From the IMG/VR virus record IMGVR_UViG_3300045970_000794, positions 124,001 to 188,000 of that record: a stretch of DNA of 64,000 nucleotides; one strand, 5' to 3'. Below the pieces are notes generated by a model. It saw only the letters and a list, made by a program, of their open reading frames with translations. It did not search any database and had not been told where the DNA came from. This document shows positions 40,020 to 64,000 of this stretch, piece after piece (the first letter of the stretch is position 1; every line of letters begins with the position of its first letter). The position numbers and the translations under genes were made by a program.

Positions 40020-41651
40020 ATGGAAAAATTCAAATTAAATGATTTTATTCTAAAAGCTAAAACCATTCATGGTGATAAATATGATTACTCTATCACAAAA
40101 TATCGTAATATAACATCAAAAGTTAAAATAATATGTCCGATACATGGTGAGGTTGAATTAGTTGCTAGAGAACATCTTTATAATAAAATTGGATGTCCAA
40201 AATGTTATAGTAAATTCAATGATATTGAATTAGTAATAAATGAAGCTAATTTGATTCATGGTGATAAATATGATTATTCATTAGTTAATTATATTAATAA
40301 AAAAACTAAAGTTAAAATAATTTGCCCAATACATGGTGAATTTGAACAATTATTACATTCACATGTGAACAATAAACAAGGTTGTCCAAAATGTAGTGGT
40401 AATAAACGATTAACAACTAATGATTTTATTGAAAAAGCTAAAACTATTCATGGTACTAAATACGATTATTCATTAGTTGAATATGTTAATAATTTAACTA
40501 AAGTTAAAATTATATGTCCAATCCATGGTGAATTCGAACAATCACCATCAAATCATTTAATTGGTAGGGGTTGCAAAATATGTGGTAATATTAAATTATC
40601 AGAATTTAGAACTAAAACTAGTGATGAATTTATATCTGAGGCTAATAAAATTCATAATAATAAGTACATATATAATTTAACTGAATATATTGATTGTAAA
40701 AATAAAGTTAAAATAATATGCCCAGTACATGGCGAATTTGAACAAACACCAGATGCCCATATAAATGGTAAACAAGGTTGTCCGAAATGTTCAACAACCA
40801 ATAGCCAACCTGAAGAAGAAATTAATGATTTTATATTTTCATTGGGTATTGAAACTGTTAGACATGATAAAAAAATCCTTAATGGTAAAGAGTTAGATAT
40901 CCTAATACCATCACATAATATAGCTATCGAATTTGATGGACTATATTGGCATTCTGAATTATATGTATCATCTGATTATCATTTATCAAAAACAAATTTA
41001 TGTATAAAAAATGGTATTCAATTAATTCATATATTCGAGGATGAATGGATGTATAGAAAAGAAATAGTTAAAAGTAGATTAAAAAATATATTGGGGTTAA
41101 CCGAAAATAAGGTGTTTGCTAGGAAATGTGAGGTTAAAGAGATTCCACCCAAAATTGCAAAATCATTTCTTAACAATAATCATATTCAAGGATATACTAA
41201 TTCTAATATTAAATTAGGATTATACCACAATAATAATTTAGTTTCTGTTATGTTATTTAATAAACCAAGAAAAGGTATTGGAAATACGGTTGATGGTTAT
41301 GAATTAAGTAGGTTTGCTAGTAAATTAGATATTAATGTGCTTGGTGGTGCATCTAAATTATTTAAATACTTCATCAGTAATTATTCAGCTAATAATGTAA
41401 TAAGTTATGCTGATAGAAGATGGTCTAATGGTAATTTATATGATAAATTAGGTTTTACTTTAAAATCTATTAATAGACCAACGTATTGGTATATATTTAA
41501 TAATAAACGTAAACATAGATTATTATTTAGAAAACAATTATTAATTAAAGATGGTTATGATAAGAACTTAACTGAGCATAGTATAATGCTCAATCGTAAA
41601 ATTTTTAGAATATATGATTGTGGTACTAAAACATATATTCTAAAATTGTAA
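40020..41651 (+). mobile_element. Homing endonuclease with four DUF723-like zinc-ribbon repeats and a Hef-like PD-(D/E)xK C-terminus
   Basis: Four copies of HGxKYxY...KVKIICPxHGE...GCPxC, then ELDILIPSHNIAIEFDGLYWHS and IYDCG. Opposite orientation to the structural operon. Confidence 0.78.
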
Positions 41652-51687: not shown

Positions 51688-53640
51688 TTAACTTATTGAT
51701 TTGTATTTAAATACAAAATTTATCATATCTAATGAACCTGTAAATGTATCACCCACATCCGCTGGATTCCTATATATTCTAATATGCATAGCAGTGTCAG
51801 CTGATAATGTCATTGCACTTCTAACTGTTGGTGAAAATAAGAATGTATTCGCACGATTTGGAACGTCAACCAATGATAATGTTTCGGCTGGTGTAACTAA
51901 ACTTCCAAGTTCACTAGTACTACCAGTATATATCTCTAAATATGTTTTAGCTGATGTTGTACCAGTACTAGTTGTTCTCCATGTAAAATAAAAATCTGGT
52001 TCGCTATGATAATCATCTGGTGTGATAAATGAAATACCAGCATCACTAGTCGCACCACTTCCATTAAATCTAGTTACCACCATAACTAATGGTGTTAATG
52101 TAACTCTAGTCGCAGTATTCAATGTAATATCATTTGAATTGAAAATTAATTCTCTAGTTACTTTAGTGTCAGCAGTTATATTAGCAATTCCATTATTTTG
52201 CTTGATTGTTAAGGTGCCCGCTGAATTTGTAACACCAGTTACGTATGTATCACCACTTACAAAACCAGTTACTGTAAACGTACCTCCTGTATTATTTCTG
52301 TAAGTTGCTGTACCATTTGAATAAGTACCTCCTGTTACATATGTATCACCAGTCACAAAACCAGTTACAGTAAATGTGCCACCTGTATTATTTCTATAAG
52401 TTGCTGTACCATTTGAATATGTACCTCCAGTAGTATAAACATCAGTAGGTAAATTAAGGTAAGTCGTTGCACTTAATTGACCCGCAACTGTCAAACCAGT
52501 AAATGTGTTAATTGTAACTGAATAATTATTTCCTAGTGAATTATTTATTGTTAATGTATTTGCACTATACGCAAATCCAGTTACTTTAGATTCATTAGTG
52601 GTTTGAAGGAAAATTCCGTAAATATCTACTCCACCAAGATATAAATAATTTAATACATCTAACGAATCAATAACACCACTTTTGTTAATAATCGATACGG
52701 AAACTCGTCCACTAACTGCGTCATTTATCAATAACCTACCAACTCTAATTGCATAGCTAGGACTTATTGGTTTTGTGGTTGTTAATCCACCTAATACACC
52801 GTCACTTAAATATAATTCATCACCAGCAACACCACCATATAATGTTGTATTTAATTCATTTACATTACCCCTTACGGTTACATAACCATATCCATCATTT
52901 TCAATTGTTTCGGTTGTAATACCTAATACAATGGTTGATGCACTTGATGTAGCAATCGTCATTGCGATTGTTTGTGTTGTGGTGGTAGTACCACCAGCAC
53001 CAGTTACGTATACAACACTACCATTAGGTATTTGAACACCGCTATTATTATAAACATAAACTAATTCTTCTTGTCCTATTTGTAATGTAACACTATCATC
53101 AATTTCAGCGGCCATAGTTTTCCATTCTGAATCATAATAGATTCTACCAGCTGAAAATCCAGTAACAGTTGGATTACTATTAAATTGTAAAGTATTTGCA
53201 CTTAATCCATCTGTAAATATTGTAGGACCAGTTACGGTACCACCTGTGAATGTAGAAGATGGTATATTAAGGTAAGTTGTTGCACTAATCGTATTGGCCG
53301 TTAAACCATTGGTAAACGTAGTAGGGCCAGTTACGGTACCCCCTGTGAATGCGTTAGCAATACCAGTTAAATTAGAACCATTACCATAATATGTGGTTGC
53401 ACTAATAGTTGTGGCTGAAATCAACCCATTAATATAGAAATTTCCCGTAACAGTATCACCAGTTCTAGATATTCGGTCCCATCCAATTGGAATAATCGAA
53501 TTTGCTGTTGTGCCAGACGCATATAATTTAACATCAGCAACATTTATCGCCAATTCACCAAGTAATAAGTCACCATTTGATGGTACTTTCCCAACTACAT
53601 TGCTTCTTTTAAGAACAACGGTATTCTTACGTATTGCCAT
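51688..53640 (-). CDS. Tail fibre protein with a conserved N-terminal attachment domain
   Basis: LKRSNVVGKVPSNGDLLLGELAINVADVKLY N-terminus. FTGGTVTG and GGTYSNGTATYRNNTGGTFTVTG repeats, including a 96-bp tandem unit at 52261/52357. Confidence 0.7.
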   Translation of the reverse strand: MAIRKNTVVLKRSNVVGKVPSNGDLLLGELAINVADVKLYASGTTANSIIPIGWDRISRTGDTVTGNFYINGLISATTISATTYYGNGSNLTGIANAFTGGTVTGPTTFTNGLTANTISATTYLNIPSSTFTGGTVTGPTIFTDGLSANTLQFNSNPTVTGFSAGRIYYDSEWKTMAAEIDDSVTLQIGQEELVYVYNNSGVQIPNGSVVYVTGAGGTTTTTQTIAMTIATSSASTIVLGITTETIENDGYGYVTVRGNVNELNTTLYGGVAGDELYLSDGVLGGLTTTKPISPSYAIRVGRLLINDAVSGRVSVSIINKSGVIDSLDVLNYLYLGGVDIYGIFLQTTNESKVTGFAYSANTLTINNSLGNNYSVTINTFTGLTVAGQLSATTYLNLPTDVYTTGGTYSNGTATYRNNTGGTFTVTGFVTGDTYVTGGTYSNGTATYRNNTGGTFTVTGFVSGDTYVTGVTNSAGTLTIKQNNGIANITADTKVTRELIFNSNDITLNTATRVTLTPLVMVVTRFNGSGATSDAGISFITPDDYHSEPDFYFTWRTTSTGTTSAKTYLEIYTGSTSELGSLVTPAETLSLVDVPNRANTFLFSPTVRSAMTLSADTAMHIRIYRNPADVGDTFTGSLDMINFVFKYKSIS

Positions 53641-53710
53641 ATTAATAGCTATTTTGTGGCCCTATATAGGGTTTATTAGATTTGAAGATTATATAACCTA
53701 CTTAAAATAA

Positions 53711-53738
53711 ATATCCCCAAACTTGCATTTGAGGATAT
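53711..53738. terminator. Hairpin between fibre genes
   Basis: ATATCCCCAAA-CTTGCA-TTTGAGGATAT, overlapping an ATATTTAT motif on the minus strand. Confidence 0.45.
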
Positions 53739-53784
53739 AAACATTGAAATATAATTAATTTGGAAAAGTAATATATTACTCAGT

Positions 53785-55386
53785 CTAAAATGACCCACCA
53801 TCGAGCACATCCCATTCAGCAATTACTCTTACACCATTAGGTGTTGTAACATCACTACTTCGAATCACAATATCATTTAATTGAGTTACAAAGCCTCTGT
53901 TAGCGTACCCATTTAGTGCTGTATATTCACTAATATCTGGAACATTACTTGCAGTAAGTCCAGTTAATGTCTGCATTGTTCTAATATCAAGATTAACTGA
54001 CGAACCAGACGTTCCACTACCATCTTGAATGGTCCAACCAGCACCAATTGACGCTGAGGTAGTACTACCAGTAGGATTATAATTAATATAAACATTATTA
54101 TCTTCAATATATAATTCAGATGTAAATGCTGAAATTGCTTGACCAAATAATGTTAAATTACCATAAACTAATAAATCACCAGAACCAATTGTTTGACCAA
54201 CTGTTAATCCAGATACTACTGTTAAACCACCTGTTATAATATCACCAGTAACATTAACATAGCGACTATCTAAATCAATTAGTGTATGATGTACACTAGT
54301 ATCAGCAGTATGTGCAGTAAAATTAATATTATCAGTCTTAGAATCTAATGATGTTTGTAAATTAATTACAGCACTAATAGGATGAGTATGAGCACTATCA
54401 CCAATAATACTTAAAGTAATACTAGATAATGGATAATGAATAGTTGTATCACCAGTATGACTAACAAAATCAATTATTGTAACAGCAGATATTTGAGTAG
54501 TAGTTACATAATGAGGATTATTTGTATCACCAGTATGATTCGCAAAATCAGTTTGGTATGTCAACGCACTTAAACTAACACTATAAGCACTTAAACTATC
54601 ATTTCTATCAAAATAAATTGTTTTATTATCAAAAGTACTAGCTGTTGTGAATGTATTTGTATCACTACCAGTTAAAGCAAATATATTAAGTAAATTAGTA
54701 CCACCTGACAATATTGTATCACCACTTATTGTTATTGCACTAATTGATGGTGTAATTAAACCACCACTCATTGTACCACCTGTTATATTTACATATAAAC
54801 CATCTAATTCAGTAATTGTATGATGAACACTAGTGTCGGCAGTATGAGTAGTTAAATCAGATTGATAAGCTAATGTATTTAAATTAGCTGTATATGCAGA
54901 TAATTGGTCATTCCTATCAAAATAAACCGTTTTATCAATTAATGTTGCACCAGTAGTAAAAGTATCGGCACTTAATAGATTGGCAAATGACGTTAAATCA
55001 ACATCAATATCAACACCATCACTTCTATAATATCTTAAAAGATAGCCAGTATTACTTCCACTAACAACATATTTATCCAATCCATTGATAACGTCAATTA
55101 ATGGTGTACCACCGCTATAATATGTGTCAGCACTAACGGTAAGTGTACTTATTGGCATGGTGAATACCGTAACACCACTCAATAGATGAATTTCACTATC
55201 ACCGCTACATGAGTAAATATGGTTAGTAACTACACCAGTGCATGCGGTAATGCTAATGAAATCAGTTCCATTAGGTTCGATTATAACATTTTCAATAATA
55301 TTTGGTTGTGTAGGACACGTATTTTGTGATTCATACCCACCGTTTGTTATATAAATGTTCTCGTTTATTTCATTGCAATTACCCAT
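53785..55386 (-). CDS. Tail fibre-like protein
   Basis: Thr/Ser/Gly-rich. Repeats DTxTFTTxxTxxxKTxYFDRND and HTxDTxxH. Ends with LDGGSF. Confidence 0.6.
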   Translation of the reverse strand: MGNCNEINENIYITNGGYESQNTCPTQPNIIENVIIEPNGTDFISITACTGVVTNHIYSCSGDSEIHLLSGVTVFTMPISTLTVSADTYYSGGTPLIDVINGLDKYVVSGSNTGYLLRYYRSDGVDIDVDLTSFANLLSADTFTTGATLIDKTVYFDRNDQLSAYTANLNTLAYQSDLTTHTADTSVHHTITELDGLYVNITGGTMSGGLITPSISAITISGDTILSGGTNLLNIFALTGSDTNTFTTASTFDNKTIYFDRNDSLSAYSVSLSALTYQTDFANHTGDTNNPHYVTTTQISAVTIIDFVSHTGDTTIHYPLSSITLSIIGDSAHTHPISAVINLQTSLDSKTDNINFTAHTADTSVHHTLIDLDSRYVNVTGDIITGGLTVVSGLTVGQTIGSGDLLVYGNLTLFGQAISAFTSELYIEDNNVYINYNPTGSTTSASIGAGWTIQDGSGTSGSSVNLDIRTMQTLTGLTASNVPDISEYTALNGYANRGFVTQLNDIVIRSSDVTTPNGVRVIAEWDVLDGGSF

Positions 55387-55387
55387 A

Positions 55388-56434
55388 TTATAATATTATT
55401 CCTGTTAATCTAAATTTTCCTGTTATTTGTTGATTTTTAGTAAAATCAATTCTTAATGTCTGACCAGCATTAATTTCAAAAGGAAATGCTGTTACAACAT
55501 TGTCAATTCTATATATTGGGTTCGTAATTCCTTGTATTGGTACGAATGTATTAAATAATGCATGATAATTATGAATCATTTCAAAATAATTTTGAGCAAA
55601 TGGTTTACAAACAATATTCAAGTTAATTGTAGCTTGAGCTTCACATACAGTTGTTTTAACAATTGGTTTAGTTGGTTCACATAATTCGACCATTACCATT
55701 GTTCTATCAATTGATGGAACTACTTTAAAATCTTCTTCATTAATTATGTAGCCCAAAAGTTTCATTTCAAACATTTGAACATAAAATCTTCTATTTTCAA
55801 AATCATCAATTGGACTTTCATCACCAATACTTTCTAAATGAACTGGCATTGGATGACCATTAGGTGAAATATAAAATTGTCTTGATTGAAAAGTTTCTTG
55901 TATTTTAACGTTAAATTTATTCAATTCACGCATTCTATTGCAAAATAACCTTACTTCATATGTCATATCAACGGATGTTGGCTGTGGCACTCTATAAGTA
56001 TCCACACCAGCTCGTCCACCGTTCCATGTCGGAACTTTCATGTATGCATATGTGTGATGACCTGGTATATTCCATAAACTTTTTTGATTTGTACCCACTT
56101 GAACATCTGGTTTTCTAACTACTGTAATAAAAGGCATTTGCATATCCTTAAATTCATCAGTAAATTTCCAAGTTCTAGCAAATTCAGCCCATCTTTGAAT
56201 GGTTAAGAATATTACTGGGACTTTTTCACCATCAATTACTATTTGTAAATCTTCATTAACGAATTCAATAAATGTTTTATCCAAATCTTCATACATAACA
56301 CCTCTAGGAAGATAAGTACCACCTTTGGCAATATCTTCAGTAACCATTTCTTCCCTTCTTCTTGGTCCGAAATGTTCTGGATATAATTTCAAATCCTTAC
56401 GAAAACCCTTAGAAAATCCTTTTGGTAATCCCAT
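55388..56434 (-). CDS. Tail completion / sheath stabiliser (T4 gp15-like)
   Basis: YEDLDKTFIEF, QRWAEF, MPFITVVR and PTSVDMTYEVRLF. Position next to the neck genes. Confidence 0.6.
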   Translation of the reverse strand: MGLPKGFSKGFRKDLKLYPEHFGPRRREEMVTEDIAKGGTYLPRGVMYEDLDKTFIEFVNEDLQIVIDGEKVPVIFLTIQRWAEFARTWKFTDEFKDMQMPFITVVRKPDVQVGTNQKSLWNIPGHHTYAYMKVPTWNGGRAGVDTYRVPQPTSVDMTYEVRLFCNRMRELNKFNVKIQETFQSRQFYISPNGHPMPVHLESIGDESPIDDFENRRFYVQMFEMKLLGYIINEEDFKVVPSIDRTMVMVELCEPTKPIVKTTVCEAQATINLNIVCKPFAQNYFEMIHNYHALFNTFVPIQGITNPIYRIDNVVTAFPFEINAGQTLRIDFTKNQQITGKFRLTGIIL

Positions 56435-56435
56435 A

Positions 56436-57056
56436 TCACATTATTTTTTTACCTTTAACCATATTATCTTTAGCCCATAATGGTTGTAAATTACTTAATG
56501 CATTTACAACACTAGGTGGTGTATCGGCTGAAAAGCTACAAACTGGTATTTTATGGTCAATATGCCATTCACCATAATTATTCCATGACATACCCTCAAC
56601 AAATAAAGATTCTAAATGCTCTTTTAATTGGTGTGGTGAATATCCTAGTAAATCAATGGTATGACCACTTTTTTTCTGACCTAACCGCCTCAATGATAAA
56701 TATAATAAACCTCTCCATTTATCACCTATTGTTTGTTTTCGACCTTTTTTTCGTTCTTTATCATATTGTTTAAGCTTAGCATCATTTTTAATCCTATATT
56801 CCTTTTGCCATTTAGAAATTATTTCAGCATTTTCAATTGTATATGTTTTTTTCTTAATCGATATTATTTCTTTATTAGATTCACGATATATTTTAACCAC
56901 TGAACAAATTTTGTCTTTATTAATAATATAACGCTGCCCATCAATTTCTTTTTTACATGTTTTACAATATGTTGAATATCCATCTTTAGATGCTGAACAT
57001 TTATTAAAATCTTCAATTGGTTTATCAATACTACACTTATAACATATTTTAACCAT
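56436..57056 (-). mobile_element. HNH homing endonuclease (probable start MVKICY at 57056)
   Basis: N-terminal CYKC...KDGYSTYCKTC zinc ribbon. WHIDHKIP...NLQPLWAKDN HNH core. Confidence 0.8.
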
Positions 57057-57057
57057 T

Positions 57058-57836
57058 TTATAATCCCTCAAATTCTATTTTATATTTCCATAAATATCCA
57101 CCAGCTGTATTACGTTTTCCAGATAATACCGAATTTATATGTTTATGTATTTTTTTAATTTCACAAACCGATTTCCATTCTTTAATTATTTCACCATCTA
57201 ATGATAATTGAAGAACTGATTTTGGCCTTTGTTTTTCGTGTTTATTTTTAACTAAATAAACATCACGCTTTAATAATTCATCAGATTTATAACGCCAAAT
57301 AAACCCACCAGCACTACTTCTTTTTTTATTAACGACTAAATTTATATTTTTAATATTAAAATTAATTTTAACATCATTAACCGATTCCCATTCTTTAATA
57401 AAATTACCATTCAAATCATATTGGATTACTGAGTCAATTATTTTTGATTTTTTAAAATAGTCAATATTTTTTGGTGTTTTACCTTTTTTTGTTTTTGACA
57501 TTTTATTTTTAGTTTAATCACTTAATTTAACACCTAATGACCCACCATCACCACCATTTGTTAAATTTTTTAATTCAAAACCCCATGTTTTGAATTGATT
57601 TATCCAGTATATCTCCCAAAATCCCCATTCCAAATTTGGTACAATATCAATTATTTCAATTATTGGTGTTTCGTTTCGATTTATTAACGATTTAATCCAA
57701 GCATCTCGTTTAGTTAGTTTTTTTTTGTTTTAGCGTCAAAAATATGACGATATAATCTCTGTTTTAAATTATTTGTTTTACCAATATATTTAACACCAAA
57801 ACTATCACTTAAACTATATATAAATACTGTATCCAT
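57058..57836 (-). pseudogene. Inactivated GIY-YIG homing endonuclease with NUMOD3/NUMOD1 domains
   Basis: ATG at 57836 gives MDTVFIYSLSD..KYIGKTNNLKQRLYRH. A 1-nt frameshift occurs in the A9 run (57718-57726). The next frame gives EIYWINQFKTWGFELKNLTNGG, then an in-frame TAA (57514-57516), then the 147-aa NUMOD1-repeat ORF 57058..57501. Confidence 0.8.
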
Positions 57837-57839
57837 ATT

Positions 57840-58364
57840 TTATTCAGCTGAAAATTCTATTTTATCAACAGGAGCGCAGATTACAGTTCTAAATGCACCT
57901 TCAAACCCCATTATTGTATGTTTATTATCAAAATGTTTTATACCATCATTAACAACACTGAAAAATCTAAGTTCAGTTTCGGTTATTGGGTATCCAATGT
58001 AATCACCATAAGATAAATCAACTTCTAATTCAGTTAATTGTTCTTCATAGATTCCAAATGTTAATTGTCCATCTTGAATGTATCTTAAACTACCAGAATC
58101 TTTACCATATACAGCATTTTCTGGTTCCGCTATGATTGGTACTACTTTTAATTCAACAGGTGTTTTAAATCTGATATCTTTTTTACCAGCTTCACCATAT
58201 AATGAATCAGTTTCACTCAAACCCCTATCAACTTGATAAAGTACCACAACAAAATTACCATCACCTTCAATTGCTTCCCTACCTAAAGATACCTCAAGTT
58301 CAAAATCCTCCCTAGAATACCATTTATTTATCCTAGTTATAGGCATTTTTCTACTATTTCCCAT
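57840..58364 (-). CDS. Neck/head completion protein (T4 gp14-like)
   Basis: VVLYQVD...SLYGEA..IRFKTPVEL, YIQDGQLTFGIY and DLSYGDYIGY. Confidence 0.55.
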   Translation of the reverse strand: MGNSRKMPITRINKWYSREDFELEVSLGREAIEGDGNFVVVLYQVDRGLSETDSLYGEAGKKDIRFKTPVELKVVPIIAEPENAVYGKDSGSLRYIQDGQLTFGIYEEQLTELEVDLSYGDYIGYPITETELRFFSVVNDGIKHFDNKHTIMGFEGAFRTVICAPVDKIEFSAE

Positions 58365-59130
58365 GATTTTTAACGTATTTATGTATTATTTTATTTGAGC
58401 AACCATATATCTCCCCAATTTGAACTAAATTTAATCCATTTTGTTTATATTCAGTTATTTGATTAACATCTAAATTATATTTATTAGACTTAGGTTTATA
58501 TATCTCAAAACGCCTAAGATTATTATTTATAACATCCTTTGAACAATTAAAATGTTTTGCTATCTCAGTTATTTTAAAGTTTTTATTTAAAAATAAATCT
58601 CTTAATTCATCCCCATTTATTTTATATTTAAAATTACCATTATTTTCATATTTATGAATTCCAAGTAATTTAACTTTTTCACTTCGTTGTTTTAACACTT
58701 TTTTCGATAATGATTTACCGTGCATCGGGTTGTTTTTACCAATATTAATTTTCTTCATATATTCTTTGGTTTCTTCGCTATGTTTTAAACCTAAACACCC
58801 TTCACCACCTTTGGTTATATTATAACCAATAGATTTTTCAGTTGAATTATATTTTTGAATCCAATATTTTTCTTTATTATCTAATATTTCTTTAGTATTA
58901 CAATGTTCAAGAATTTCCTTAATAAAATTATTTTTACCGTATTTTTTAATAGCTAATTTTATTATTTTACCAGAACCAATATAATTAGGATTATTTTTAG
59001 AATCTTGACCAATATAAATTTTACCATTGATTAGGTTAGTTGTTTTATAAACAACCATATCAAGTTCAAAATCTTCACGAGAATAGAACTTATTAATTCG
59101 AGTAATTGGTATCTTTCTATTTGCTGCCAT
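58354..59130 (-). mobile_element. GIY-YIG homing endonuclease fused in frame to a duplicate of the neck gene's first 24 codons
   Basis: MAANRKIPITRINKFYSREDFELD, then MVVYKTTNLINGKIYIGQ (own ATG at 59058), EKYWI..YN and NUMOD3 HSEETKEYM. Confidence 0.85.
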
Positions 59131-59219
59131 AATTTTTCTTTTTAGATAAATATTTATGTATTCATAAATAAGCCAGTAAGTATTGATTTTTTATTAATAT
59201 TTAGTAAATTTAGTTCACT

Positions 59220-61076
59220 ATGATAAATATAGATGATATAAAAAATCGGTCATCATTGACATTATTAGAAGGTTATAGTGGTAATAACCCATATATTCGT
59301 AAATTGAAATGGGATTATGTACAGCGTAAAACTAAATTAACTGATAATCAAATGAAATATGTAATTGATAATCACGACAAAGAGCCAATTAAAATGGATA
59401 AAGTCGTGAGGATATCACTATTACTAGGTGAAGAGTTACAAAAACAAACAAATGTTTCATTCGTACCAGAGAAAATATTAATTGAATATTTATTGGCTGA
59501 TACTGAAAAAGCTTTCCACATAATTGGTAAATTAAAGAAAAATCAAAAGGAATCCAGAATGTACTGGATACCTAAAACTCAAATATTTGATGACATATAT
59601 TTTGATGAAATTGACATTGAAGTTGATTTTGACAAATATAAAGCTCTTGATTCACTACATAGAGAACCATTCGAACATCAAAAAACGGGTGTTAAATTTC
59701 TATTAAGTCGAAATGGGTGTATTTTAGCTGATGATATGGGTCTTGCCAAAACATGGCAAGCAATTGTTGCGGCTTTGGAGTCTAATTGTATGAAAATATT
59801 AGTAGTTTGTCCATCTTCAGTTAAAATTAATTGGCAACGTGAAATTAACTGTTTTTGTGATGATACTGTAATTGTTAGTGGTAAAAAATGGAAATCATCT
59901 AGATTCACAATTATTAACTATGATATTCTTAAAAATTTCCATACAATTAAAGAACCTAAAAAATCAGAAGAAGAAGTTACTGTTGAGGTTAAGACTCAAT
60001 TAATTAAAGGTGATTTTGATTTAGTTATTATCGATGAAGCCCATTACCTTAAAAACCCAAAAAGTATTAGAGGTAAGATTATGACTGATTTATGTATTAA
60101 ACATAATATTGAAAAAGTGTGGTTATTATCTGGTACTCCAATTACAAATCGACCTATGGATTATTATAACCTTTTAAAGCTAATTAAGAGCCCTATAACA
60201 GACAATTGGGTCTTTTATGCAAAAAGGTATTGCGATGGGAAAAAGTTCTTTAAAACGCTTAAAACTGGTCAAAGAAAGCAAATATGGCTTACAAATGGTT
60301 CTTCTAACTTAGATGAGTTGGCTCAGAAAACTAGAAACATTATGTTAAGGCGTAAAAAGGAAGAAGTATTGGATATGCCAGAAAAGACTAGAATTCCAGT
60401 CTTCCATGAGTTAGATAAAGCTGGATGGGCTGAATATGATAATCTTTGGGATGAATATTTAGAACAAAGGAAACTTGACGGTAAAACAGTTAATCTACAA
60501 CGAGATTTAACTGAAACTATTTTATTGAGACGATTCATTGCTAAACAATCAATACAACATACTATTGATTTAGCTAATAGTGCGATTGAGCAAGAACAAA
60601 AAGTAATTATATTCACAACATTTACTGATGAATTATTGGAATTGCAAGAATATTTTGGAAAAGAATGTGTTGTTCACTACGGTAAAATAAATGACCGACA
60701 AAAGCAATATGCTGTTGATAAATTTCAAACTGACCCTAATATTAAAGTGTTTATTGGTAACGTAATATCGGCTGGTGTTGGTATTACCTTGACAGCTGCT
60801 AATATAGTTATATTTAATTCATATGATTGGACACCTGGTAATAATGACCAATGTGAAGACCGTGCTTATCGTATTGGTCAAAATAATAATGTTACAGTAT
60901 ATTATCATTTATTTATGAGAACCATATCAACAGTGATGTGGAAAATATTATATGAGAAAAGAAACATAATCTCAATCATCATGAGTGAACAGAATTGTCC
61001 AGAAGATATTGCGATTGATATTATATTAAAAGATGAATTAACTAATGGAACAGAAAGTAATTGTATATCTGATTAA
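59220..61076 (+). CDS. SNF2/SWI2-family helicase
   Basis: HQKTGVKF, LADDMGLAKT, VVCPSSVKINW, IIDEAH, LSGTPITNRP, GVGITLT and QCEDRAYRIGQ. Confidence 0.88.
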   Translation: MINIDDIKNRSSLTLLEGYSGNNPYIRKLKWDYVQRKTKLTDNQMKYVIDNHDKEPIKMDKVVRISLLLGEELQKQTNVSFVPEKILIEYLLADTEKAFHIIGKLKKNQKESRMYWIPKTQIFDDIYFDEIDIEVDFDKYKALDSLHREPFEHQKTGVKFLLSRNGCILADDMGLAKTWQAIVAALESNCMKILVVCPSSVKINWQREINCFCDDTVIVSGKKWKSSRFTIINYDILKNFHTIKEPKKSEEEVTVEVKTQLIKGDFDLVIIDEAHYLKNPKSIRGKIMTDLCIKHNIEKVWLLSGTPITNRPMDYYNLLKLIKSPITDNWVFYAKRYCDGKKFFKTLKTGQRKQIWLTNGSSNLDELAQKTRNIMLRRKKEEVLDMPEKTRIPVFHELDKAGWAEYDNLWDEYLEQRKLDGKTVNLQRDLTETILLRRFIAKQSIQHTIDLANSAIEQEQKVIIFTTFTDELLELQEYFGKECVVHYGKINDRQKQYAVDKFQTDPNIKVFIGNVISAGVGITLTAANIVIFNSYDWTPGNNDQCEDRAYRIGQNNNVTVYYHLFMRTISTVMWKILYEKRNIISIIMSEQNCPEDIAIDIILKDELTNGTESNCISD

Positions 61077-61317
61077 TGAGTGCCCTTATTGTGAAAAGCT
61101 TGAAAAATTACTTAATGAAGCTAATATTGAACATACAGCTATCAATATTGACACTAAAGAAGGTGATGAATTGTTTAAGCCAGTGTATGACTTAACTAAA
61201 TCTGAAATGGTTCCAACAATTGTGATTGGGGAACGAATATTAGTACCAGAAATTAGTTTTATGACAATAGATATGGCATTTAAATTAATAAAAATGACAT
61301 TAAGTGGTGAAGTTTAA
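61045..61317 (+). CDS. Glutaredoxin/NrdH-like redoxin
   Basis: CPYC active site and VPTIVI cis-Pro motif. Confidence 0.8.
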   Translation: MEQKVIVYLINECPYCEKLEKLLNEANIEHTAINIDTKEGDELFKPVYDLTKSEMVPTIVIGERILVPEISFMTIDMAFKLIKMTLSGEV

Positions 61318-61608
61318 TTATTCTTCGCCTTTTTTGTTCATTAATTTAGTTATTCTTAAATTTAATATTTTTTTACCATTAATTGTTGGGTGACCGAACT
61401 CATCGGTATCAATATCTTTAACTTTAACCTTTTTATTTCTAAATTTACCCATTAAAACTTCATCACCAACCTCAATTGGTAATTCAATCACTTCATTCAA
61501 CTCATTAATTCTATCAATTTGAGATTCAGTTACAATAATTCTTCTAGGATTACCATTTCTGATTTTATCGTACTGTGATTCAGTAATTTTTATAGTTCGT
61601 TTAGCCAT
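61318..61608 (-). CDS. Hypothetical protein with two I(K/V)xTESQ motifs (start MAKRTI at 61608)
   Basis: KRTIKITESQY and RRIIVTESQI. SH3/KOW-like C-terminus (EVGDEVLMGKFRNKKVKV). Confidence 0.55.
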   Translation of the reverse strand: MAKRTIKITESQYDKIRNGNPRRIIVTESQIDRINELNEVIELPIEVGDEVLMGKFRNKKVKVKDIDTDEFGHPTINGKKILNLRITKLMNKKGEE

Positions 61609-61677
61609 TGGATATGTTTTTATATAAATATTGTGCTGATATTGAAAGTTATTGATATTTATATGTAAAAGATTATT

Positions 61678-61737
61678 ATGGCAGCAACACAAGCAGAAAA
61701 AGATAGATTATTCAGTATATCAAATCCAATTTTTTAA
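61678..61737 (+). pseudogene. Orphaned 5' end of the neck gene (MAATQAEKDRLFS...)
   Basis: Matches MAASEIEKTRLF at 62725 at 8 of 12 residues. Similarity ends at the endonuclease stop codon (61712-61714). Confidence 0.65.
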
Positions 61738-62482
61738 CAATATTTTCATTGTATTTTATTTCGACTAGTGTAATATTATTTTTATTACAATATTTTCGTT
61801 TAATTTCATCACTCTCAGTTGTTAACTTAAATGCATTCTCACCAAAAAGTTTGCATGGTCTATAATGTTGTTCGCCTTGATATTCAATACATGTATTATA
61901 TTCTGGAATATAAAAGTCAAATGGTAATAGATTAATTCGCTTGCAATCATCAAATTTATGTTGTGGAATGAAATTAATATTGTGTTTATTCAAATAATCT
62001 CTAATTGTTTTTTCACCATTAGATTCAGAACACATTGGGCATCCACGACCTTTTTTATGGTGATGTGGTATCTGTGTAAAATCACCATGTATTGGACATG
62101 TGATGATTATTTTAGTCGTAGAATTAACATATATAACTTTTGAATAGTTATAAAAACCATTATGTATTTTTGATAATTCATTAATATATGATTCGGTCGT
62201 TATTCTTGGTATTTTTAATTTGTATGCCTTTTCTTTAATGTCTTTAGCATCTCTTCTTAATTTTTCCCCACAATATTTACTACCAAAATTACTATAGTTT
62301 TCTTTTAAAAATAAAATTTCATCAGTACCCCAAACATTTAAAATATTTAATCCTAATTTATTTGCTTTAACACGTATTGCATTTTTATTTCTATCTAAAA
62401 ACGATGTACATCCAGCTACACCGTTAATCGGGTAGTTTTTGATTAATATATCAATTTCTTCATTAGTCCAATATGTGTTCAT
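61712..62482 (-). mobile_element. Homing-endonuclease-like protein: helical repeats, DUF723-like zinc ribbon and PD-(D/E)xK/DUF559-type domain
   Basis: WTNEEIDIL repeats, CPIHGDF...GCPMC and LPFDFYIPEYNTCIEYQGEQHY. Confidence 0.75.
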
Positions 62483-62642
62483 GTTTTATACCTATATTAA
62501 TTTTTTCCCTTATTATTTCAGATAATTTAACTATTCTATTTTCTTCATTACTACGCTTAATCGTTAAATTAACCAATTGATTATAGATATTTTCATCTAT
62601 TTTAATTGATATGTGTTTCAAATTCATTTTATTTCGTCCCAT
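62463..62642 (-). CDS. Small ribbon-helix-helix-like DNA-binding protein (59 aa, not in the ORF track)
   Basis: MGRNKMNLKHISIKIDENIYNQLVNLTIKRSNEENRIVKLSEIIREKINIGIKHEHILD*. Alternating beta strand followed by two helices. Overlaps the endonuclease start. Confidence 0.55.
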   Translation of the reverse strand: MGRNKMNLKHISIKIDENIYNQLVNLTIKRSNEENRIVKLSEIIREKINIGIKHEHILD

Positions 62643-62724
62643 AATATATTGTATTACTTTATAATAAATATACGAATATTTAAAAAATTAGTTGCATTCA
62701 GATATTTATTTAAAAAATAAAATT

Positions 62725-63894
62725 ATGGCTGCAAGTGAAATTGAGAAAACACGCTTATTTAGACAAGTTAGACATCAACTAGGTGCTCCAATGCGTAAAA
62801 TTGAGTTACCAGACGAAAATTTAGTAACTTTATTGGAATTATCTATTGAAGATTACGCTGAATATGTACATAATTGGCTAATAGATAGTCAATGGTCATC
62901 ATTTATAGGTCAACCTATTGATACTTTAGATATGGCATTCGCATTAACAACTAGAACATTAGATTTTGAGACACAATTTACTTATGCTTACTCAAAACAA
63001 GTTGGTTTACAAGCTAGAGGTCCATGGGAACTCAAAAAAGATTATGTTGAGATAGAAGCTGGTAGACAAGTTTATGAAATTCCAGCTGGTCGTGAGGTAA
63101 ATCAAGTATTATGGTTAACCCCATCGGTAACTAATCGTGCATTATTTGCTAATTTTGGTGGTTTTGATAACGGTATTGGTGGTGGTTACGCTCAAACTGG
63201 TTTTGGAGTCGGTGGTGGTGGTACTGGTGCTGGTTCTGGTGGTATGGGTGGAAGAGGTGGATATTATATCGCACCAGCATTTGATGTTTTATTGACTGCG
63301 GCCGATATGAATCTTAAACATAGATTATTAAGAAGTGATTTAGTATATAAAATAACCGCTGGGCCTAATGGTACTAAGTTATTACATTTAATTAGCACAC
63401 CAGGTTCTAAAATGACATTCGGTATGGGTGGTCAAGGTGGAAGTATGGCTGGTTCTAGTTCTTTAGGTATTGCTGGATGTCACGTATGGTATCATTATTA
63501 CGATACTAATGGTGATGTTGATGCATGTAGAGCGGCTAATTTAGATATTATTACGATGCCGAATGAAGTACCATTAACTAGATTAGATTTTGATGTGTTA
63601 AATGAACCTACAAAAATATTAATTCGTCAAATATTAACAGCTAGAGCTAAAATAACCTTAGGAAGAACTAGGGGTAAGTTTGGTGGTGTTGTTGGTCCAC
63701 CAGAAGCTGAAAGAACTATGGATTGGGAAAGTTTATTAACTGAAGGTAATGAAGAATATGGTAAAATATTTGAAAGATTAGCTGCTAGGTTAGAGCAAAT
63801 GACTAATACTAAAATGTTAGAGCGAAAAGCTAATGAAGCTGAAAACTTAAATAAAACATTAGCTTATAGACCCTTAGGATTTTACGTTATTTAG
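62725..63894 (+). CDS. Neck/head-tail connector protein (T4 gp13-like); probable start ATG 62725
   Basis: RQVRHQLGAPMRKIEL, Gly-rich insert, KITLGRTRGKFGG and LLTEGNEE. Confidence 0.62.
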   Translation: MAASEIEKTRLFRQVRHQLGAPMRKIELPDENLVTLLELSIEDYAEYVHNWLIDSQWSSFIGQPIDTLDMAFALTTRTLDFETQFTYAYSKQVGLQARGPWELKKDYVEIEAGRQVYEIPAGREVNQVLWLTPSVTNRALFANFGGFDNGIGGGYAQTGFGVGGGGTGAGSGGMGGRGGYYIAPAFDVLLTAADMNLKHRLLRSDLVYKITAGPNGTKLLHLISTPGSKMTFGMGGQGGSMAGSSSLGIAGCHVWYHYYDTNGDVDACRAANLDIITMPNEVPLTRLDFDVLNEPTKILIRQILTARAKITLGRTRGKFGGVVGPPEAERTMDWESLLTEGNEEYGKIFERLAARLEQMTNTKMLERKANEAENLNKTLAYRPLGFYVI

Positions 63895-64000
63895 TAATTT
63901 TTTTTCTAATTTTTTAATTATATCTTCATTATACCTAATAATAATTAAAGGGATGCTATTAATATAACAGTATCTCTTTTTTATTTTATCTCTTTTTCTA
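63874..64000 (-). mobile_element. C-terminal fragment of another DUF559/PD-(D/E)xK-type endonuclease (partial)
   Basis: RKRDKIKKRYCYINSIPLIIIRYNEDIIKKL...* resembles the tail of 61712..62482 (DEIKRKYCNKNNITLVEIKYNENI). Confidence 0.5.

What the first reader, a model, noticed from the sequence alone, without database searches (positions are those of the whole stretch)
55388..64000. Head-tail connector locus as a homing hotspot: a general intron-less, terminus-replacing strategy
Seen: five nuclease ORFs or remnants from three families (HNH, two GIY-YIG, two PD-(D/E)xK-like) alternate with the gp15-, gp14- and gp13-like genes within about 8.6 kb. Three of them leave duplicated gene termini, and I found no intron or intein features. 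Known: phage homing endonucleases are best documented next to nucleotide-metabolism and replication genes. Inference: in this lineage conserved termini of morphogenesis genes are repeatedly targeted, which could drive allele exchange and marker exclusion between co-infecting phages.
Basis: inference. Interest (0 to 1): 0.7.

Follow-up and report, generated by a model that had tools for sequence, protein, structure and literature searches.

The report
Homing nucleases leave gene-end stubs
In a 362-kb pond phage, selfish nuclease genes have inserted at the ends of the neck genes and left short duplicate copies of those gene ends as scars; this resembles what is known from fungal mitochondria, and I found no phage paper describing it.

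Summary
Window 55388-64000 carries an HNH gene, a broken GIY-YIG gene, an intact GIY-YIG gene, and two DUF723/Vsr-like PD-(D/E)xK genes (the second runs past the window end). They are interleaved with gp15-, gp14- and gp13-like genes, with SNF2 and glutaredoxin genes in between.

Four junctions show altered gene ends:
- a 24-codon gp14 start plus its promoter, fused in frame to the intact GIY-YIG gene;
- a 12-codon gp13 start plus promoter beyond one PD-(D/E)xK gene;
- a 12-codon gp13 end beyond the other (just outside the window);
- a 4-codon in-frame repeat at the gp15 start.

Eighty relatives show a nuclease-free gene order, with each junction occupied in 5-15% of them, and the same stubs recur. 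A near-identical strain in another metagenome lacks the HNH/GIY island and has consensus gp14 and gp15 ends. Genome-wide, stubs flank 6 of 34 nuclease islands, including the major capsid gene, against about 1 of 390 control flanks.

Best reading: free-standing homing endonuclease genes spread by intron-less homing, and the stubs are scars of one-sided, partly illegitimate break repair. The pattern is not specific to neck genes. Cleavage and marker exclusion are untested. New variant of a known kind; interest is moderate.

The parts
55388..56434 (-). gp15-like gene (348 aa). Its first 8 codons (56411-56434) differ from the nuclease-free allele and create a 4-codon in-frame repeat, PKGFS-KGFR.
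   Evidence: It is collinear with 55 relatives. The Atlas lead to PF16724 T4-gp15_tss scores 0.83 by features and TM 0.63 by structure. The Pfam HMM gives no hit. The nuclease-free allele MAVPKGFRKD comes from run X3.
56436..57071 (-). HNH endonuclease gene (211 aa), ending 1 nt before the gp15 start.
   Evidence: It hits phrog_1035 at 2e-23. There are about 12 paralogues in the genome. It is absent from most relatives, and an HNH alone occupies this junction in L015. It is absent from the X3 strain.
57058..57836 (-). Broken GIY-YIG/NUMOD homing endonuclease gene. It consists of a 40-aa catalytic N-terminal piece (57714-57836), frameshifted middle remains, and a 147-aa NUMOD ORF (57058-57501).
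   Evidence: The N-terminal piece hits PF01541 at 3.8e-6. Stops are visible in the translation. The intact 263-aa homologue occupies the same junction in L032.
57840..58364 (-). gp14-like neck gene (174 aa). Its last 3 codons (57843-57851) read SAE, where the nuclease-free allele and the family consensus have (R/E)G(L).
   Evidence: There are 209 relatives at 62-70% identity. The Atlas lead is to a PF11649-bearing cluster at 0.97, TM 0.81. All top Foldseek hits are phage neck or connector chains, including T4 gp13/gp14 neck entries, at E about 1e-3.
58354..59058 (-). Intact GIY-YIG homing endonuclease core, with its own ATG at 59058. Its stop overlaps the gp14 start by 11 nt.
   Evidence: It scores 70 bits on TIGR01453 (cut-off 56) and hits NUMOD3, GIY-YIG and HTH domains. 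The same 11-nt overlap is found in L055 and L076.
59059..59130 (-). Stub: a second copy of gp14 codons 1-24, fused in frame to the GIY-YIG ORF.
   Evidence: 17/24 residues are identical, with 8 synonymous changes. No shuffle out of 500 reaches the score. Stubs of 12-24 codons occur in 6 of 7 GIY-carrying loci; one of these, L006, is a 100%-identical copy of this phage.
59131..59157 (-). Native gp14 upstream region with the promoter-like motif ATAAATATTTAT, now driving the stub-GIY fusion.
   Evidence: The same motif sits at about the same distance (roughly -30 to -12) upstream of gp14 in nearly all nuclease-free relatives shown. The nucleotide duplication runs from about -27 to +72.
59220..61317 (+). 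Resident SNF2 helicase (59220-61076) and glutaredoxin (61045-61317). They separate gp14 from gp13 in every relative.
   Evidence: Pfam and PHROG hits are.
61321..61611 (-). Unknown 97-aa ORF lying between glutaredoxin and the gp13 stub. It is extra DNA; relatives have a median of about 32 nt here.
   Evidence: No homologue appears in the 80 loci at 1e-5. Only a weak Cpn10/KOW-like hit is found.
61654..61713 (+). Stub: promoter-like GATATTTAT motif plus gp13 codons 1-12 (61678-61713, MAATQAEKDRLF). It abuts the stop of the nuclease gene.
   Evidence: 3/500 shuffles reach the score. A 12-codon stub sits at the equivalent position, beyond the PD-(D/E)xK nuclease gene, in L050 and L054. The upstream 30 nt closely match relative L030 by eye.
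61712..62482 (-). PD-(D/E)xK-like (DUF723/Vsr-type) nuclease gene, 256 aa, on the strand opposite to gp13.
   Evidence: It hits phrog_559 at 2e-53. The D...E-x-Q-G-x-Q-H motif is visible in the sequence. There are about 12 paralogues in the genome.
62463..62642 (-). 59-aa ORF just upstream of the nuclease gene, possibly a ribbon-helix-helix DNA-binding partner.
   Evidence: A 49-aa ORF sits in the same position in L054. It has no family hit. The fold assignment is my reading of the sequence pattern only.
62700..63894 (+). Functional gp13-like neck gene (ATG at 62725, 389 aa) with its own promoter-like motif.
   Evidence: The nearest Atlas clusters are PF26809 Phage_T4_gp13 families at 0.99 and TM 0.75. 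There is a weak hit to phrog_211, head-tail adaptor. The promoter-like motif is shown.
63874..64000 (-). 3' part of the second PD-(D/E)xK-like nuclease gene (305 aa, running to 64791). It overlaps the gp13 end convergently by 21 nt. The gp13 C-terminal stub lies beyond it at 64832-64870.
   Evidence: The ORF is. No shuffle out of 500 reaches the stub's score. A 26-aa stub occurs in L036.

Best explanation
The nuclease genes are free-standing homing endonuclease genes (HEGs) that spread between co-infecting relatives by break-and-repair, that is, intron-less homing.

The short duplicated gene ends are repair scars.
- When a nuclease cut a naive genome near the end of a neck gene, one side of the break was repaired by ordinary homologous copying from the donor. 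This imported the donor's gene end together with the nuclease gene.
- The other side was joined outside proper register.
- As a result, the recipient's own gene end survives as a stub on the far side of the insert. At gp15 it survives as a 4-codon in-frame repeat.
- The working gene therefore carries a replaced end.

The 5' stubs keep the native promoter-like motif and start codon.
- At gp14 this drives the GIY-YIG enzyme as a fusion to the first 24 residues of gp14.
- gp14 itself then starts 11 nt before the nuclease stop, which suggests translational coupling.
- The stubs also provide homology for later homing.

Shown here:
- the anatomy of the inserts and stubs;
- presence/absence polymorphism across relatives;
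- the scattered distribution on the host-gene tree;
- decay of some nuclease copies;
- the genome-wide association of stubs with nuclease genes;
- a near-isogenic allele without the HNH/GIY island.

Inferred, not shown:
- nuclease activity;
- the cut sites;
- the repair route;
- which copy of each duplicated end is the donor's;
- expression of the fusion.
For: **Nuclease-free gene order and polymorphism**
- The canonical order in relatives is polB, gp13, grx, snf2, then gp14, gp15 on the other strand.
- Median gaps are 237, 32, 110 and 13 nt.
- Inserts over 300 nt occur in 7/78, 4/79, 7/57 and 7/47 loci at four junctions.

**Stubs recur in relatives**
- gp14 N-terminal stubs occur in 6 of 7 GIY-carrying loci, with junctions at codons 12-24.
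- gp13 N-terminal stubs occur in L050 and L054, and a gp13 C-terminal stub in L036.
- snf2 C-terminal stubs of 66-74 aa lie beyond an HNH in L024, L050 and L054. L036 has a stub with no nuclease left.

**Mobility**
- Six GIY carriers need 6 changes on the tree, at least 4 of them forced by well-supported branches.
- GIY copies are degenerate in L021, L067 and L073, and at 57058-57836 here.

**Near-isogenic empty site**
- A 381-nt contig with 3 mismatches in 358 nt joins 56412 to 57852 through 23 nt that are absent from this window.
- It gives consensus gp14 (..EFEGL) and gp15 (MAVPKGFR..) ends.
- So the empty allele is not a simple deletion of the occupied one, and the occupied allele has replaced ends.

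**Regulatory reuse**
- The promoter-like motif is conserved before gp13 and gp14 in nearly all relatives shown and is retained before both 5' stubs.
- The in-frame fusion and the 11-nt overlap are conserved in all three intact GIY carriers.

**Genome-wide association**
- Stubs lie on the far side of 6 real nuclease islands.
- One is a 39-aa major-capsid C-terminal copy with 22 identical residues.
- Comparison with controls gives P=0.0009 to 4e-5.

**Allele signature and independent assemblies**
- The working gp14 has W at residue 15 in 5/7 GIY carriers against 9/57 non-carriers (P=0.004), and the three stubs long enough to cover that residue carry F.
- Independent assemblies carry the same arrangement (L006; X1 and X2 contigs).

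**Published support for the repair route**
- One-sided, microhomology-mediated repair during homing in T4 is described in PMC2988022, citing Parker et al. 1999.
Against: - No enzyme was assayed and no cut site is known.
- Relatives are only 62-70% identical, so co-conversion tracts could not be seen. GIY carriers are not clearly closer to this phage in the gp14 5' region (0.66 against 0.63 identity).
- The W15 association is not corrected for shared ancestry.
- Three PD-(D/E)xK inserts at the gp13|grx junction in relatives (L014, L079, L083) show no detectable stub, and the broken GIY gene leaves none. The scar is therefore frequent, not universal.
- No nuclease-free allele was recovered for the gp13 or gp14-5' junctions in near-identical strains.
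- Which copy is resident and which is imported is argued only from position, upstream similarity and consensus.
- The nuclease-free contig is a single low-depth Logan contig (depth 3.4).
Confidence: 0.72

Rival explanations
1. The duplicated ends are an evolved part of the mobile cassette, a true 'terminus-replacing strategy'. Under this reading each nuclease gene carries a spare gene end, and at gp13 a spare promoter too. This would let it insert inside a coding region without killing an essential gene, and selection would maintain the spare end. The stubs would then be the disabled originals.
For: - The functional gp13 start has its own promoter-like motif inside the insert.
- The gp13 C-terminal codons are encoded antisense to the last codons of the nuclease gene.
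- The GIY stop / gp14 start overlap is conserved in three genomes.
- The same cassette-plus-stub layouts recur in distant relatives.
- HEG-linked alternative or duplicated gene ends are described in fungal mitochondrial genes (PMC4019555).
Against: - The same facts follow from passive co-conversion of donor flanks.
- Several inserts of the same nuclease families have no stub.
- gp14's last three codons were replaced by a non-consensus end (SAE against RG-hydrophobic). This looks like damage rather than a designed spare part.
- Stub lengths vary from 12 to 24 codons at a single site.
Confidence: 0.18
2. The stubs arose from local tandem duplication or slippage unrelated to the nucleases, and nuclease genes later settled in the resulting spacers.
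For: - L036 has an snf2 C-terminal stub directly after the full gene with no nuclease gene between them.
- Tandem whole-gene paralogues exist elsewhere in the genome.
Against: - Short end-only stubs are almost confined to nuclease islands (6/64 against 1/390 flanks).
- In every case the stub lies on the far side of the nuclease gene.
- The L036 case is equally a footprint left after nuclease loss.
- The near-isogenic empty gp14|gp15 allele has no duplication at all.
Confidence: 0.05
3. The nuclease genes are domesticated phage functions (for example packaging helpers, anti-defence or exclusion nucleases) rather than selfish elements, and their position by the neck genes reflects co-regulation.
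For: - The GIY-YIG gene is placed under the gp14 late-type promoter-like motif.
- HNH proteins assisting terminases and HEG-derived functional domains are known. The latter is discussed in PMC10448857; the former rests on my own knowledge.
Against: - Each junction is occupied in only 5-15% of relatives.
- The distribution on the tree is scattered.
- Pseudogenes are frequent.
- There are about 38 paralogous units across the genome.
- A near-identical strain does without two of them.
Confidence: 0.05

Closest known systems
Free-standing Seg (GIY-YIG) and Mob (HNH) homing endonucleases of T4-like phages; intron-less homing and localized marker exclusion (SegF, SegG, SegB, MobE)
   Same: - They are free-standing nuclease genes next to conserved genes, with no intron or intein.
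- They are sporadic among relatives.
- The T4 genome is also very nuclease-rich, about 11% HEG sequence (PMC2988022).
- The domain layout is I-TevI-like: GIY-YIG, NUMOD3 and HTH.
   Different: - The T4 review does not use the word stem 'duplicat' at all, so no end stubs are described there.
- Here the inserts sit within the first or last 3-24 codons and leave stubs.
- One nuclease is fused in frame to the target's N-terminus.
- A third family (DUF723 plus Vsr-like PD-(D/E)xK) is as common as the other two.
- Activity is untested here.
HEG-associated duplicated or alternative gene ends in fungal mitochondria (Allomyces atp6, Ophiostoma rps3, Phlebia radiata atp6/cox2, Tremella N-terminal duplications)
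   Same: A nuclease gene inserted at a gene end, a foreign or alternative end fused in frame, and the displaced original end left nearby (PMC4019555; PMC8393795).
   Different: - Those cases are in organelle genomes and mostly involve introns or former intron ORFs.
- Here the genome is a phage genome, both 5' and 3' ends are affected, promoters are duplicated too, and the same scar appears at many genes in one genome.
'HEG islands' bracketing essential and structural genes in ICP1 and other phages (Barth et al. 2023)
   Same: Nuclease genes flank essential morphogenesis genes and mark recombination boundaries. gp13 here is bracketed by two PD-(D/E)xK genes (PMC10448857).
   Different: - That work concerns the T5orf172 and IPA-HNH families.
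- In the text I searched, it reports duplications inside the nuclease DNA-binding domains, not stubs of the target genes.
Genes split by HEG insertion (Aeh1 nrdA/mobE, T4 gene 60/mobA, phage 25 gene 43)
   Same: A free-standing nuclease gene has entered a coding region without an intron (PMC2988022).
   Different: - Those genes are cut into two polypeptides that reassemble.
- Here the gene stays whole because its end is supplied again.
'Core creep': in-frame fusion of intron ORFs to the upstream exon
   Same: The nuclease borrows the host gene's start and expression signals through an in-frame fusion (PMC8393795).
   Different: No intron is involved. The fused piece is a redundant copy of the host gene's first 12-24 codons.

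Membership tests
GIY-YIG homing endonucleases (I-TevI/Seg type) | GIY-YIG catalytic domain joined to NUMOD/HTH DNA-binding modules | tested here: met
   For 58354-59130: TIGR01453 scores 70 bits against a 56-bit cut-off. NUMOD3 hits at 3.5e-7. PF01541 scores 21.3 bits, just under its 22.6 cut-off, and reaches 22.6 with its neighbours in the frame.
GIY-YIG homing endonucleases (I-TevI/Seg type) | Site-specific cleavage of the nuclease-free allele, and resistance of the occupied allele | not testable with these tools
   There is only an indirect hint: W15 in the working gp14 of 5/7 carriers against F15 in stubs and in most non-carriers.
Homing endonuclease genes in general | Presence/absence polymorphism at a fixed site, with a distribution discordant with host phylogeny | tested here: met
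   Occupancy is 5-15% at each of four junctions. Six changes are needed for six carriers on the tree. A near-isogenic empty allele exists.
HNH endonucleases (phage endonuclease VII / HNH group) | HNH motif-bearing domain | tested here: met
   phrog_1035 hits at 2e-23. The motif H-x3-H...N...N is visible in ..EWHIDHKIPV..NLQPLWAKDN... There is no Pfam HNH hit at E<=0.01.
PD-(D/E)xK (Vsr-like) homing-type nucleases with DUF723 zinc ribbons | Restriction-endonuclease-like core with acidic and Lys/Gln catalytic residues | tested here: inconclusive
   phrog_559 hits at 2e-53. DUF723 repeats are present in the 305-aa gene. Vsr (1.4e-4) and MTES_1575 hits appear only in the 543-aa paralogue. The D...E-x-Q motif is read by eye.
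T4 gp13 neck protein (PF26809) | Match to the family profile | tested here: inconclusive
   PF26809 is not in the HMM library offered. The nearest Atlas clusters are 87-98% PF26809, at 0.99 and TM 0.75. The AlphaFold model was too poor to use (pLDDT 46).
T4 gp14 neck protein (PF11649) | Match to the family profile | tested here: not met
   PF11649 finds nothing in the genome at E<=1. Supporting leads only: a neighbouring Atlas cluster is 11% PF11649, and all top Foldseek hits are phage neck or connector chains at E about 1e-3, TM 0.3-0.5.
T4 gp15 tail sheath stabiliser (PF16724) | Match to the family profile | tested here: not met
   PF16724 finds nothing at E<=1. Atlas gives a lead only, at 0.83 by features and TM 0.63 to a cluster that is 12% PF16724.
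Group I intron or intein-borne HEG | Ribozyme fold or in-frame splicing domain around the nuclease gene | tested here: not met
   There is no Rfam match in 53000-64000. The nuclease genes lie outside the uninterrupted host ORFs.

The most novel reading that the evidence does not exclude
Terminal stubs are a general, machine-searchable footprint of intron-less homing in phages.
- They would record roughly where the break was repaired, and they can outlast the nuclease gene (a stub without a nuclease gene in L036).
- They would therefore allow gain, loss and end-swapping of essential structural genes to be reconstructed in uncultured phages.
- In addition, 5' stubs are exapted. The nuclease is expressed from the target gene's own late promoter as an N-terminal fusion and is translationally coupled to the target. 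This would be a phage counterpart of mitochondrial 'core creep' that ties nuclease dosage to virion assembly.
Probability: 0.3. Interest if true: 0.6.

Novelty: new variant of a known kind. Interest (0 to 1): 0.5.

Why it matters
- The scars give a sequence-only way to recognise homing events, approximate junction sites and past nuclease occupancy in uncultured phage genomes, where crosses cannot be done.
- They show that even the extreme ends of essential virion genes (neck proteins and the major capsid protein) are repeatedly rewritten by selfish nucleases. This creates mosaic gene ends and in-frame repeats that annotation pipelines will misread as small ORFs or odd start sites.
- If the 5' stubs really drive nuclease expression, the arrangement shows how a selfish gene borrows an essential gene's promoter without harming it.

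Tried and rejected
- **Phage database searches.** BLAST of the region and of the gp13-like and gp14-like proteins against 50,697 GenBank phage records gave no match.
- **Profile searches against PDB sequences.** Profiles of the three neck-gene alignments found nothing.
- **Pfam HMM searches in the genome.** PF11649 and PF16724 gave no hit, and PF26809 is not in the library.
- **Structure prediction.** The AlphaFold model of gp13-like was too poor to search (pLDDT 46). The gp14-like model (pLDDT 62) gave only weak, though thematically consistent, Foldseek hits.
- **Co-conversion tracts.** I compared 5' and 3' identity of gp14 between GIY carriers and non-carriers. There was no usable signal at 65-70% identity.
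- **gp14 C-terminal or gp15 N-terminal stubs inside the HNH/GIY island.** None was found. The scar there is an in-frame repeat and a replaced end, seen only by comparison with the nuclease-free contig.
- **Nuclease-free alleles at the gp13 junctions.** Laying contigs on the region gave only cross-mapping of paralogous nuclease genes.
- **Within-genome clustering.** This does not hold as evidence for a hotspot (scan statistic P about 0.09).
- **The apparent stubs at genome 25953-26559.** These are similarity between tRNA genes and were excluded.
- **Assembly chimera.** I considered this and set it aside, because a 100%-identical independent contig (L006) and single contigs in X1 and X2 span the joins.
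- **Literature.** Five full-text searches found no phage paper describing target-gene end stubs beside HEGs. The library is incomplete, so this is not proof of absence.

Full report
**Where the window lies**

The window is bases 124001-188000 of a complete 362,102-bp virus record with direct terminal repeats. The region has about 30% G+C. It has no nucleotide or protein match among GenBank phage records. It does have at least 209 relatives in IMG/VR, several on contigs of 350-370 kb. Two pond metagenomes hold the sequence itself, and a freshwater-sediment metagenome holds a close strain.

**Gene map, 55388-64000 and just beyond**

On the minus strand, in the direction of transcription:
- a promoter-like motif at 59146-59157;
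- a 258-codon ORF at 59130-58354;
- the gp14-like gene at 58364-57840;
- a broken GIY-YIG gene at 57836-57058;
- an HNH gene at 57071-56436;
- the gp15-like gene at 56434-55388, followed by fibre-like genes.

On the plus strand:
- SNF2 helicase at 59220-61076 and glutaredoxin at 61045-61317;
- the gp13-like gene at 62725-63894.

Between glutaredoxin and gp13 lie, on the minus strand:
- an unknown 97-codon ORF (61611-61321);
- a PD-(D/E)xK-like gene (62482-61712);
- a 59-codon ORF (62642-62463).

After gp13 comes a second PD-(D/E)xK-like gene (64791-63874, minus strand), then a family-B DNA polymerase (69306-64903, minus strand).

**Family assignments of the nucleases**

- The 258-codon ORF is an I-TevI-type GIY-YIG enzyme: TIGR01453 at 70 bits (cut-off 56), plus NUMOD3 and HTH domains.
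- The HNH gene hits phrog_1035 at 2e-23.
- The two PD-(D/E)xK-like genes hit phrog_559. They carry DUF723 zinc-ribbon repeats, and a 543-aa paralogue reaches Vsr and a restriction-endonuclease family.
- The broken GIY-YIG gene has a 40-residue PF01541 piece ending in a stop, frameshifted remains and a 147-residue NUMOD ORF. Relative L032 has the intact 263-residue gene at the same junction.

**Identity of the neck genes**

This is less firm.
- No Pfam or PHROG model hits gp14-like or gp15-like.
- Profiles of 30-sequence alignments find nothing among PDB sequences.
- The ESM Atlas places gp13-like inside clusters that are 87-98% Phage_T4_gp13 (0.99, TM 0.75).
- It places gp14-like next to a cluster that partly carries T4_neck-protein (0.97, TM 0.81).
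- It gives only a lead to T4-gp15_tss for the third gene.
- A moderate AlphaFold model of gp14-like (pLDDT 62) finds only phage neck and connector chains at the top of the Foldseek list, including T4 gp13/gp14 neck entries, but at E about 1e-3.

I accept 'neck-gene-like' as the working name.

**The duplicated ends are real**

- *gp14 start.* Codons 1-24 of the 258-codon ORF repeat codons 1-24 of gp14 (17 identical residues, 8 synonymous differences). Codon 25 is the nuclease's own ATG, followed by the usual GIY-YIG opening. No shuffle out of 500 reaches the score. At nucleotide level the repeat runs from about -27 to +72.
- *gp13 start.* MAATQAEKDRLF at 61678-61713 repeats gp13's first 12 residues. 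It starts on an ATG, lies on gp13's strand, and abuts the nuclease stop (3/500 shuffles).
- *gp13 end.* TMKYRPMGFYVI followed by a stop, at 64832-64870, repeats gp13's last 12 residues beyond the second nuclease gene (0/500 shuffles). This stub lies outside the window.
- *gp14|gp15 island.* No separate stub exists there, but see the empty-site allele below.

**Relatives give the empty sites**

- In 80 loci the order is polB, gp13, grx, snf2, then gp14 and gp15 on the other strand. Median gaps are 237, 32, 110 and 13 nt.
- Inserts over 300 nt occur at snf2|gp14 in 7/78 loci, gp14|gp15 in 4/79, gp13|grx in 7/57 and polB|gp13 in 7/47.
- HNH genes also occur between snf2 and grx.
- About 11 relatives carry a LAGLIDADG intein in the SNF2 P-loop.
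- The 97-codon ORF and everything else between grx and gp13 here is extra DNA relative to the relatives.

**The stubs recur in relatives**

- Six of seven GIY-carrying loci have a gp14 N-terminal stub. Junctions lie after codons 12, 14, 14, 21, about 23 and 24.
- L050 and L054 have a 12-residue gp13 N-terminal stub, and L036 has a 26-residue gp13 C-terminal stub.
- L024, L050 and L054 have 66-74-residue snf2 C-terminal stubs beyond an HNH gene. L036 has such a stub with no nuclease gene left.
- Three PD-(D/E)xK inserts (L014, L079, L083) show no stub.

**Evidence for mobility**

- On a tree of gp14 (residues 31 to the end) plus gp15, the six GIY carriers need six changes. At least four are forced by well-supported branches, which is no more clustered than shuffled labels.
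- Three carriers have intact, in-frame stub-GIY fusions whose stop overlaps the gp14 start by 11 nt. Three have decayed copies.

**A near-isogenic empty-site allele**

- In the sediment run, one 381-nt contig matches 56293-56412 and 57852-58089 with 3 mismatches in 358 nt. It bridges the two parts with 23 nt that occur nowhere in the window.
- Read on the coding strand, it gives gp14 ending ..KIEFEGL, a stop, one base, then gp15 starting MAVPKGFRKD.
- Both ends fit the family consensus..EF(R)G-hydrophobic for gp14 and MA(M/L/V)PKG(F/Y) for gp15.
- This phage instead has ..KIEFSAE and MGLPKGFS-KGFRKD.
- So the 1.4-kb island came with a different gp15 start that was joined four codons out of register, and it clipped the last three codons of gp14.
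- This is what one-sided, microhomology-mediated repair would leave. That route has been demonstrated for intron homing in T4 (PMC2988022, citing Parker et al. 1999).

**Regulatory reuse**

- Nearly all relatives shown have an ATATTTAT-type motif roughly 12-30 nt upstream of the gp13 and gp14 starts.
- Both 5' stubs keep it. The gp13 stub's upstream 30 nt closely match those of relative L030.
- The working gp13 has a second copy of the motif. The working gp14 has only a relic, lying inside the nuclease's 3' coding region.
- From this I infer that the GIY-YIG enzyme is made from gp14's own promoter and start as a fusion, with gp14 translated by coupling. This is not shown.

**Is it general?**

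- The genome holds about 38 nuclease units of these families, about one per 9.5 kb.
- I took the 40 residues of each flanking gene that face a nuclease island and searched the island with shuffled controls. Eight of 66 flanks score z>5.
- Two of those are tRNA-to-tRNA similarity and were excluded.
- The remaining six, apart from the gp14 and gp13 cases, include a 39-residue copy of the major capsid protein's C-terminus with 22 identical residues. They also include a 24-residue N-terminal copy of a P-loop kinase-like gene and two C-terminal copies of unknown genes. Each lies on the far side of the island.
- Among 398 control flanks around ordinary genes, nine score z>5, and eight of those are tandem whole-gene paralogues.
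- Fisher tests give P=0.0009 uncorrected and 4e-5 after both exclusions.
But the phenomenon is genome-wide, not a property of neck genes.
- The neck locus is the densest cluster (6 units in 10 kb, 7 in 15 kb), yet a scan statistic gives only P about 0.09.

**A possible immunity mark**

- The working gp14 has Trp at residue 15 in 5 of 7 GIY carriers against 9 of 57 non-carriers (P=0.004).
- The three stubs long enough to include that residue have Phe.
- Shared ancestry is not controlled, and no co-conversion tract is visible at this divergence.

**Comparison with what is known**

- Free-standing HEGs, intron-less homing and marker exclusion are textbook T4 biology (PMC2988022). That review does not mention target-gene duplications.
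- HEGs bracketing structural genes are described for ICP1 and other phages (PMC10448857).
- Duplicated or replaced gene ends next to HEGs are described in fungal mitochondria: atp6, cox2 and rps3 (PMC4019555; PMC8393795).
- Five full-text searches found no phage report of such stubs.
- I therefore rate this a new variant of a known kind. It is well supported as an observation, ordinary in mechanism, and useful as a footprint.

**Verdict**

- Observation: confirmed.
- Best explanation: selfish homing nucleases with repair scars, confidence about 0.7.
- Interest: 0.5.

Noticed in passing
L005:3903-8306 (window-equivalent 64903-69306, minus strand): The family-B DNA polymerase carries a roughly 355-residue in-frame insert (residues 606-960) with a LAGLIDADG_3 domain. 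Nearly all relatives lack it, so it is an intein with its own homing endonuclease just past the window end.
   Followed up: partly
L010:2548-3657, and about 10 other loci (L014, L015, L016, L037, L050, L054, L060, L067, L074, L079): In these relatives the SNF2 helicase is interrupted in its P-loop (..DDMGLGK | insert | T..) by a roughly 370-residue in-frame LAGLIDADG intein-like insert ending in HN. This phage lacks it.
   Followed up: partly
window 62463-62642 (minus strand); L054:975-1124: A 49-59-residue ORF with a ribbon-helix-helix-like sequence pattern sits directly upstream of the PD-(D/E)xK nuclease gene in both genomes. It may be a small DNA-binding regulator travelling with the nuclease. 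No family hit supports this.
   Followed up: partly
window 61321-61611 (minus strand): A 97-residue ORF lies between glutaredoxin and the gp13 stub, with no homologue in the 80 related loci and only a weak Cpn10/KOW-like hit. Its origin and role are unknown.
   Followed up: partly
genome 239791-243859 (window-equivalent 115791-119859, outside the window): The T4 gp23-like major capsid gene has a 39-residue copy of its C-terminus (22 residues identical, followed by a stop) beyond an island holding a broken PD-(D/E)xK gene and an HNH gene. This is the strongest stub in the genome.
   Followed up: partly
genome 24000-29000 (outside the window): A cluster of 12 tRNA genes has an HNH gene inserted between tRNA-Lys and tRNA-Glu. 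This recalls T4 segB in its tRNA region.
   Followed up: partly
L036:5834-6046: A 74-residue copy of the SNF2 C-terminus lies 4 nt after the full-length gene with no nuclease gene between them. It may be a footprint left after loss of an HNH gene.
   Followed up: no
window 40020-41651 (plus strand): A 543-residue paralogue of the PD-(D/E)xK nucleases carries three DUF723 repeats, CapR-like and Vsr-like hits, and a C-terminal Mom-family hit. This is an unusual domain combination.
   Followed up: no
window 59146-59157, 61666-61674, 62707-62715, and upstream of gp13 and gp14 in the relatives: A conserved ATATTTAT-type motif lies roughly 12-30 nt upstream of the start codons of these late-type genes. 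It is a likely late promoter element of this phage family. The 10-mer alone is not enriched in the window (4 matches against 3.2 expected).
   Followed up: partly
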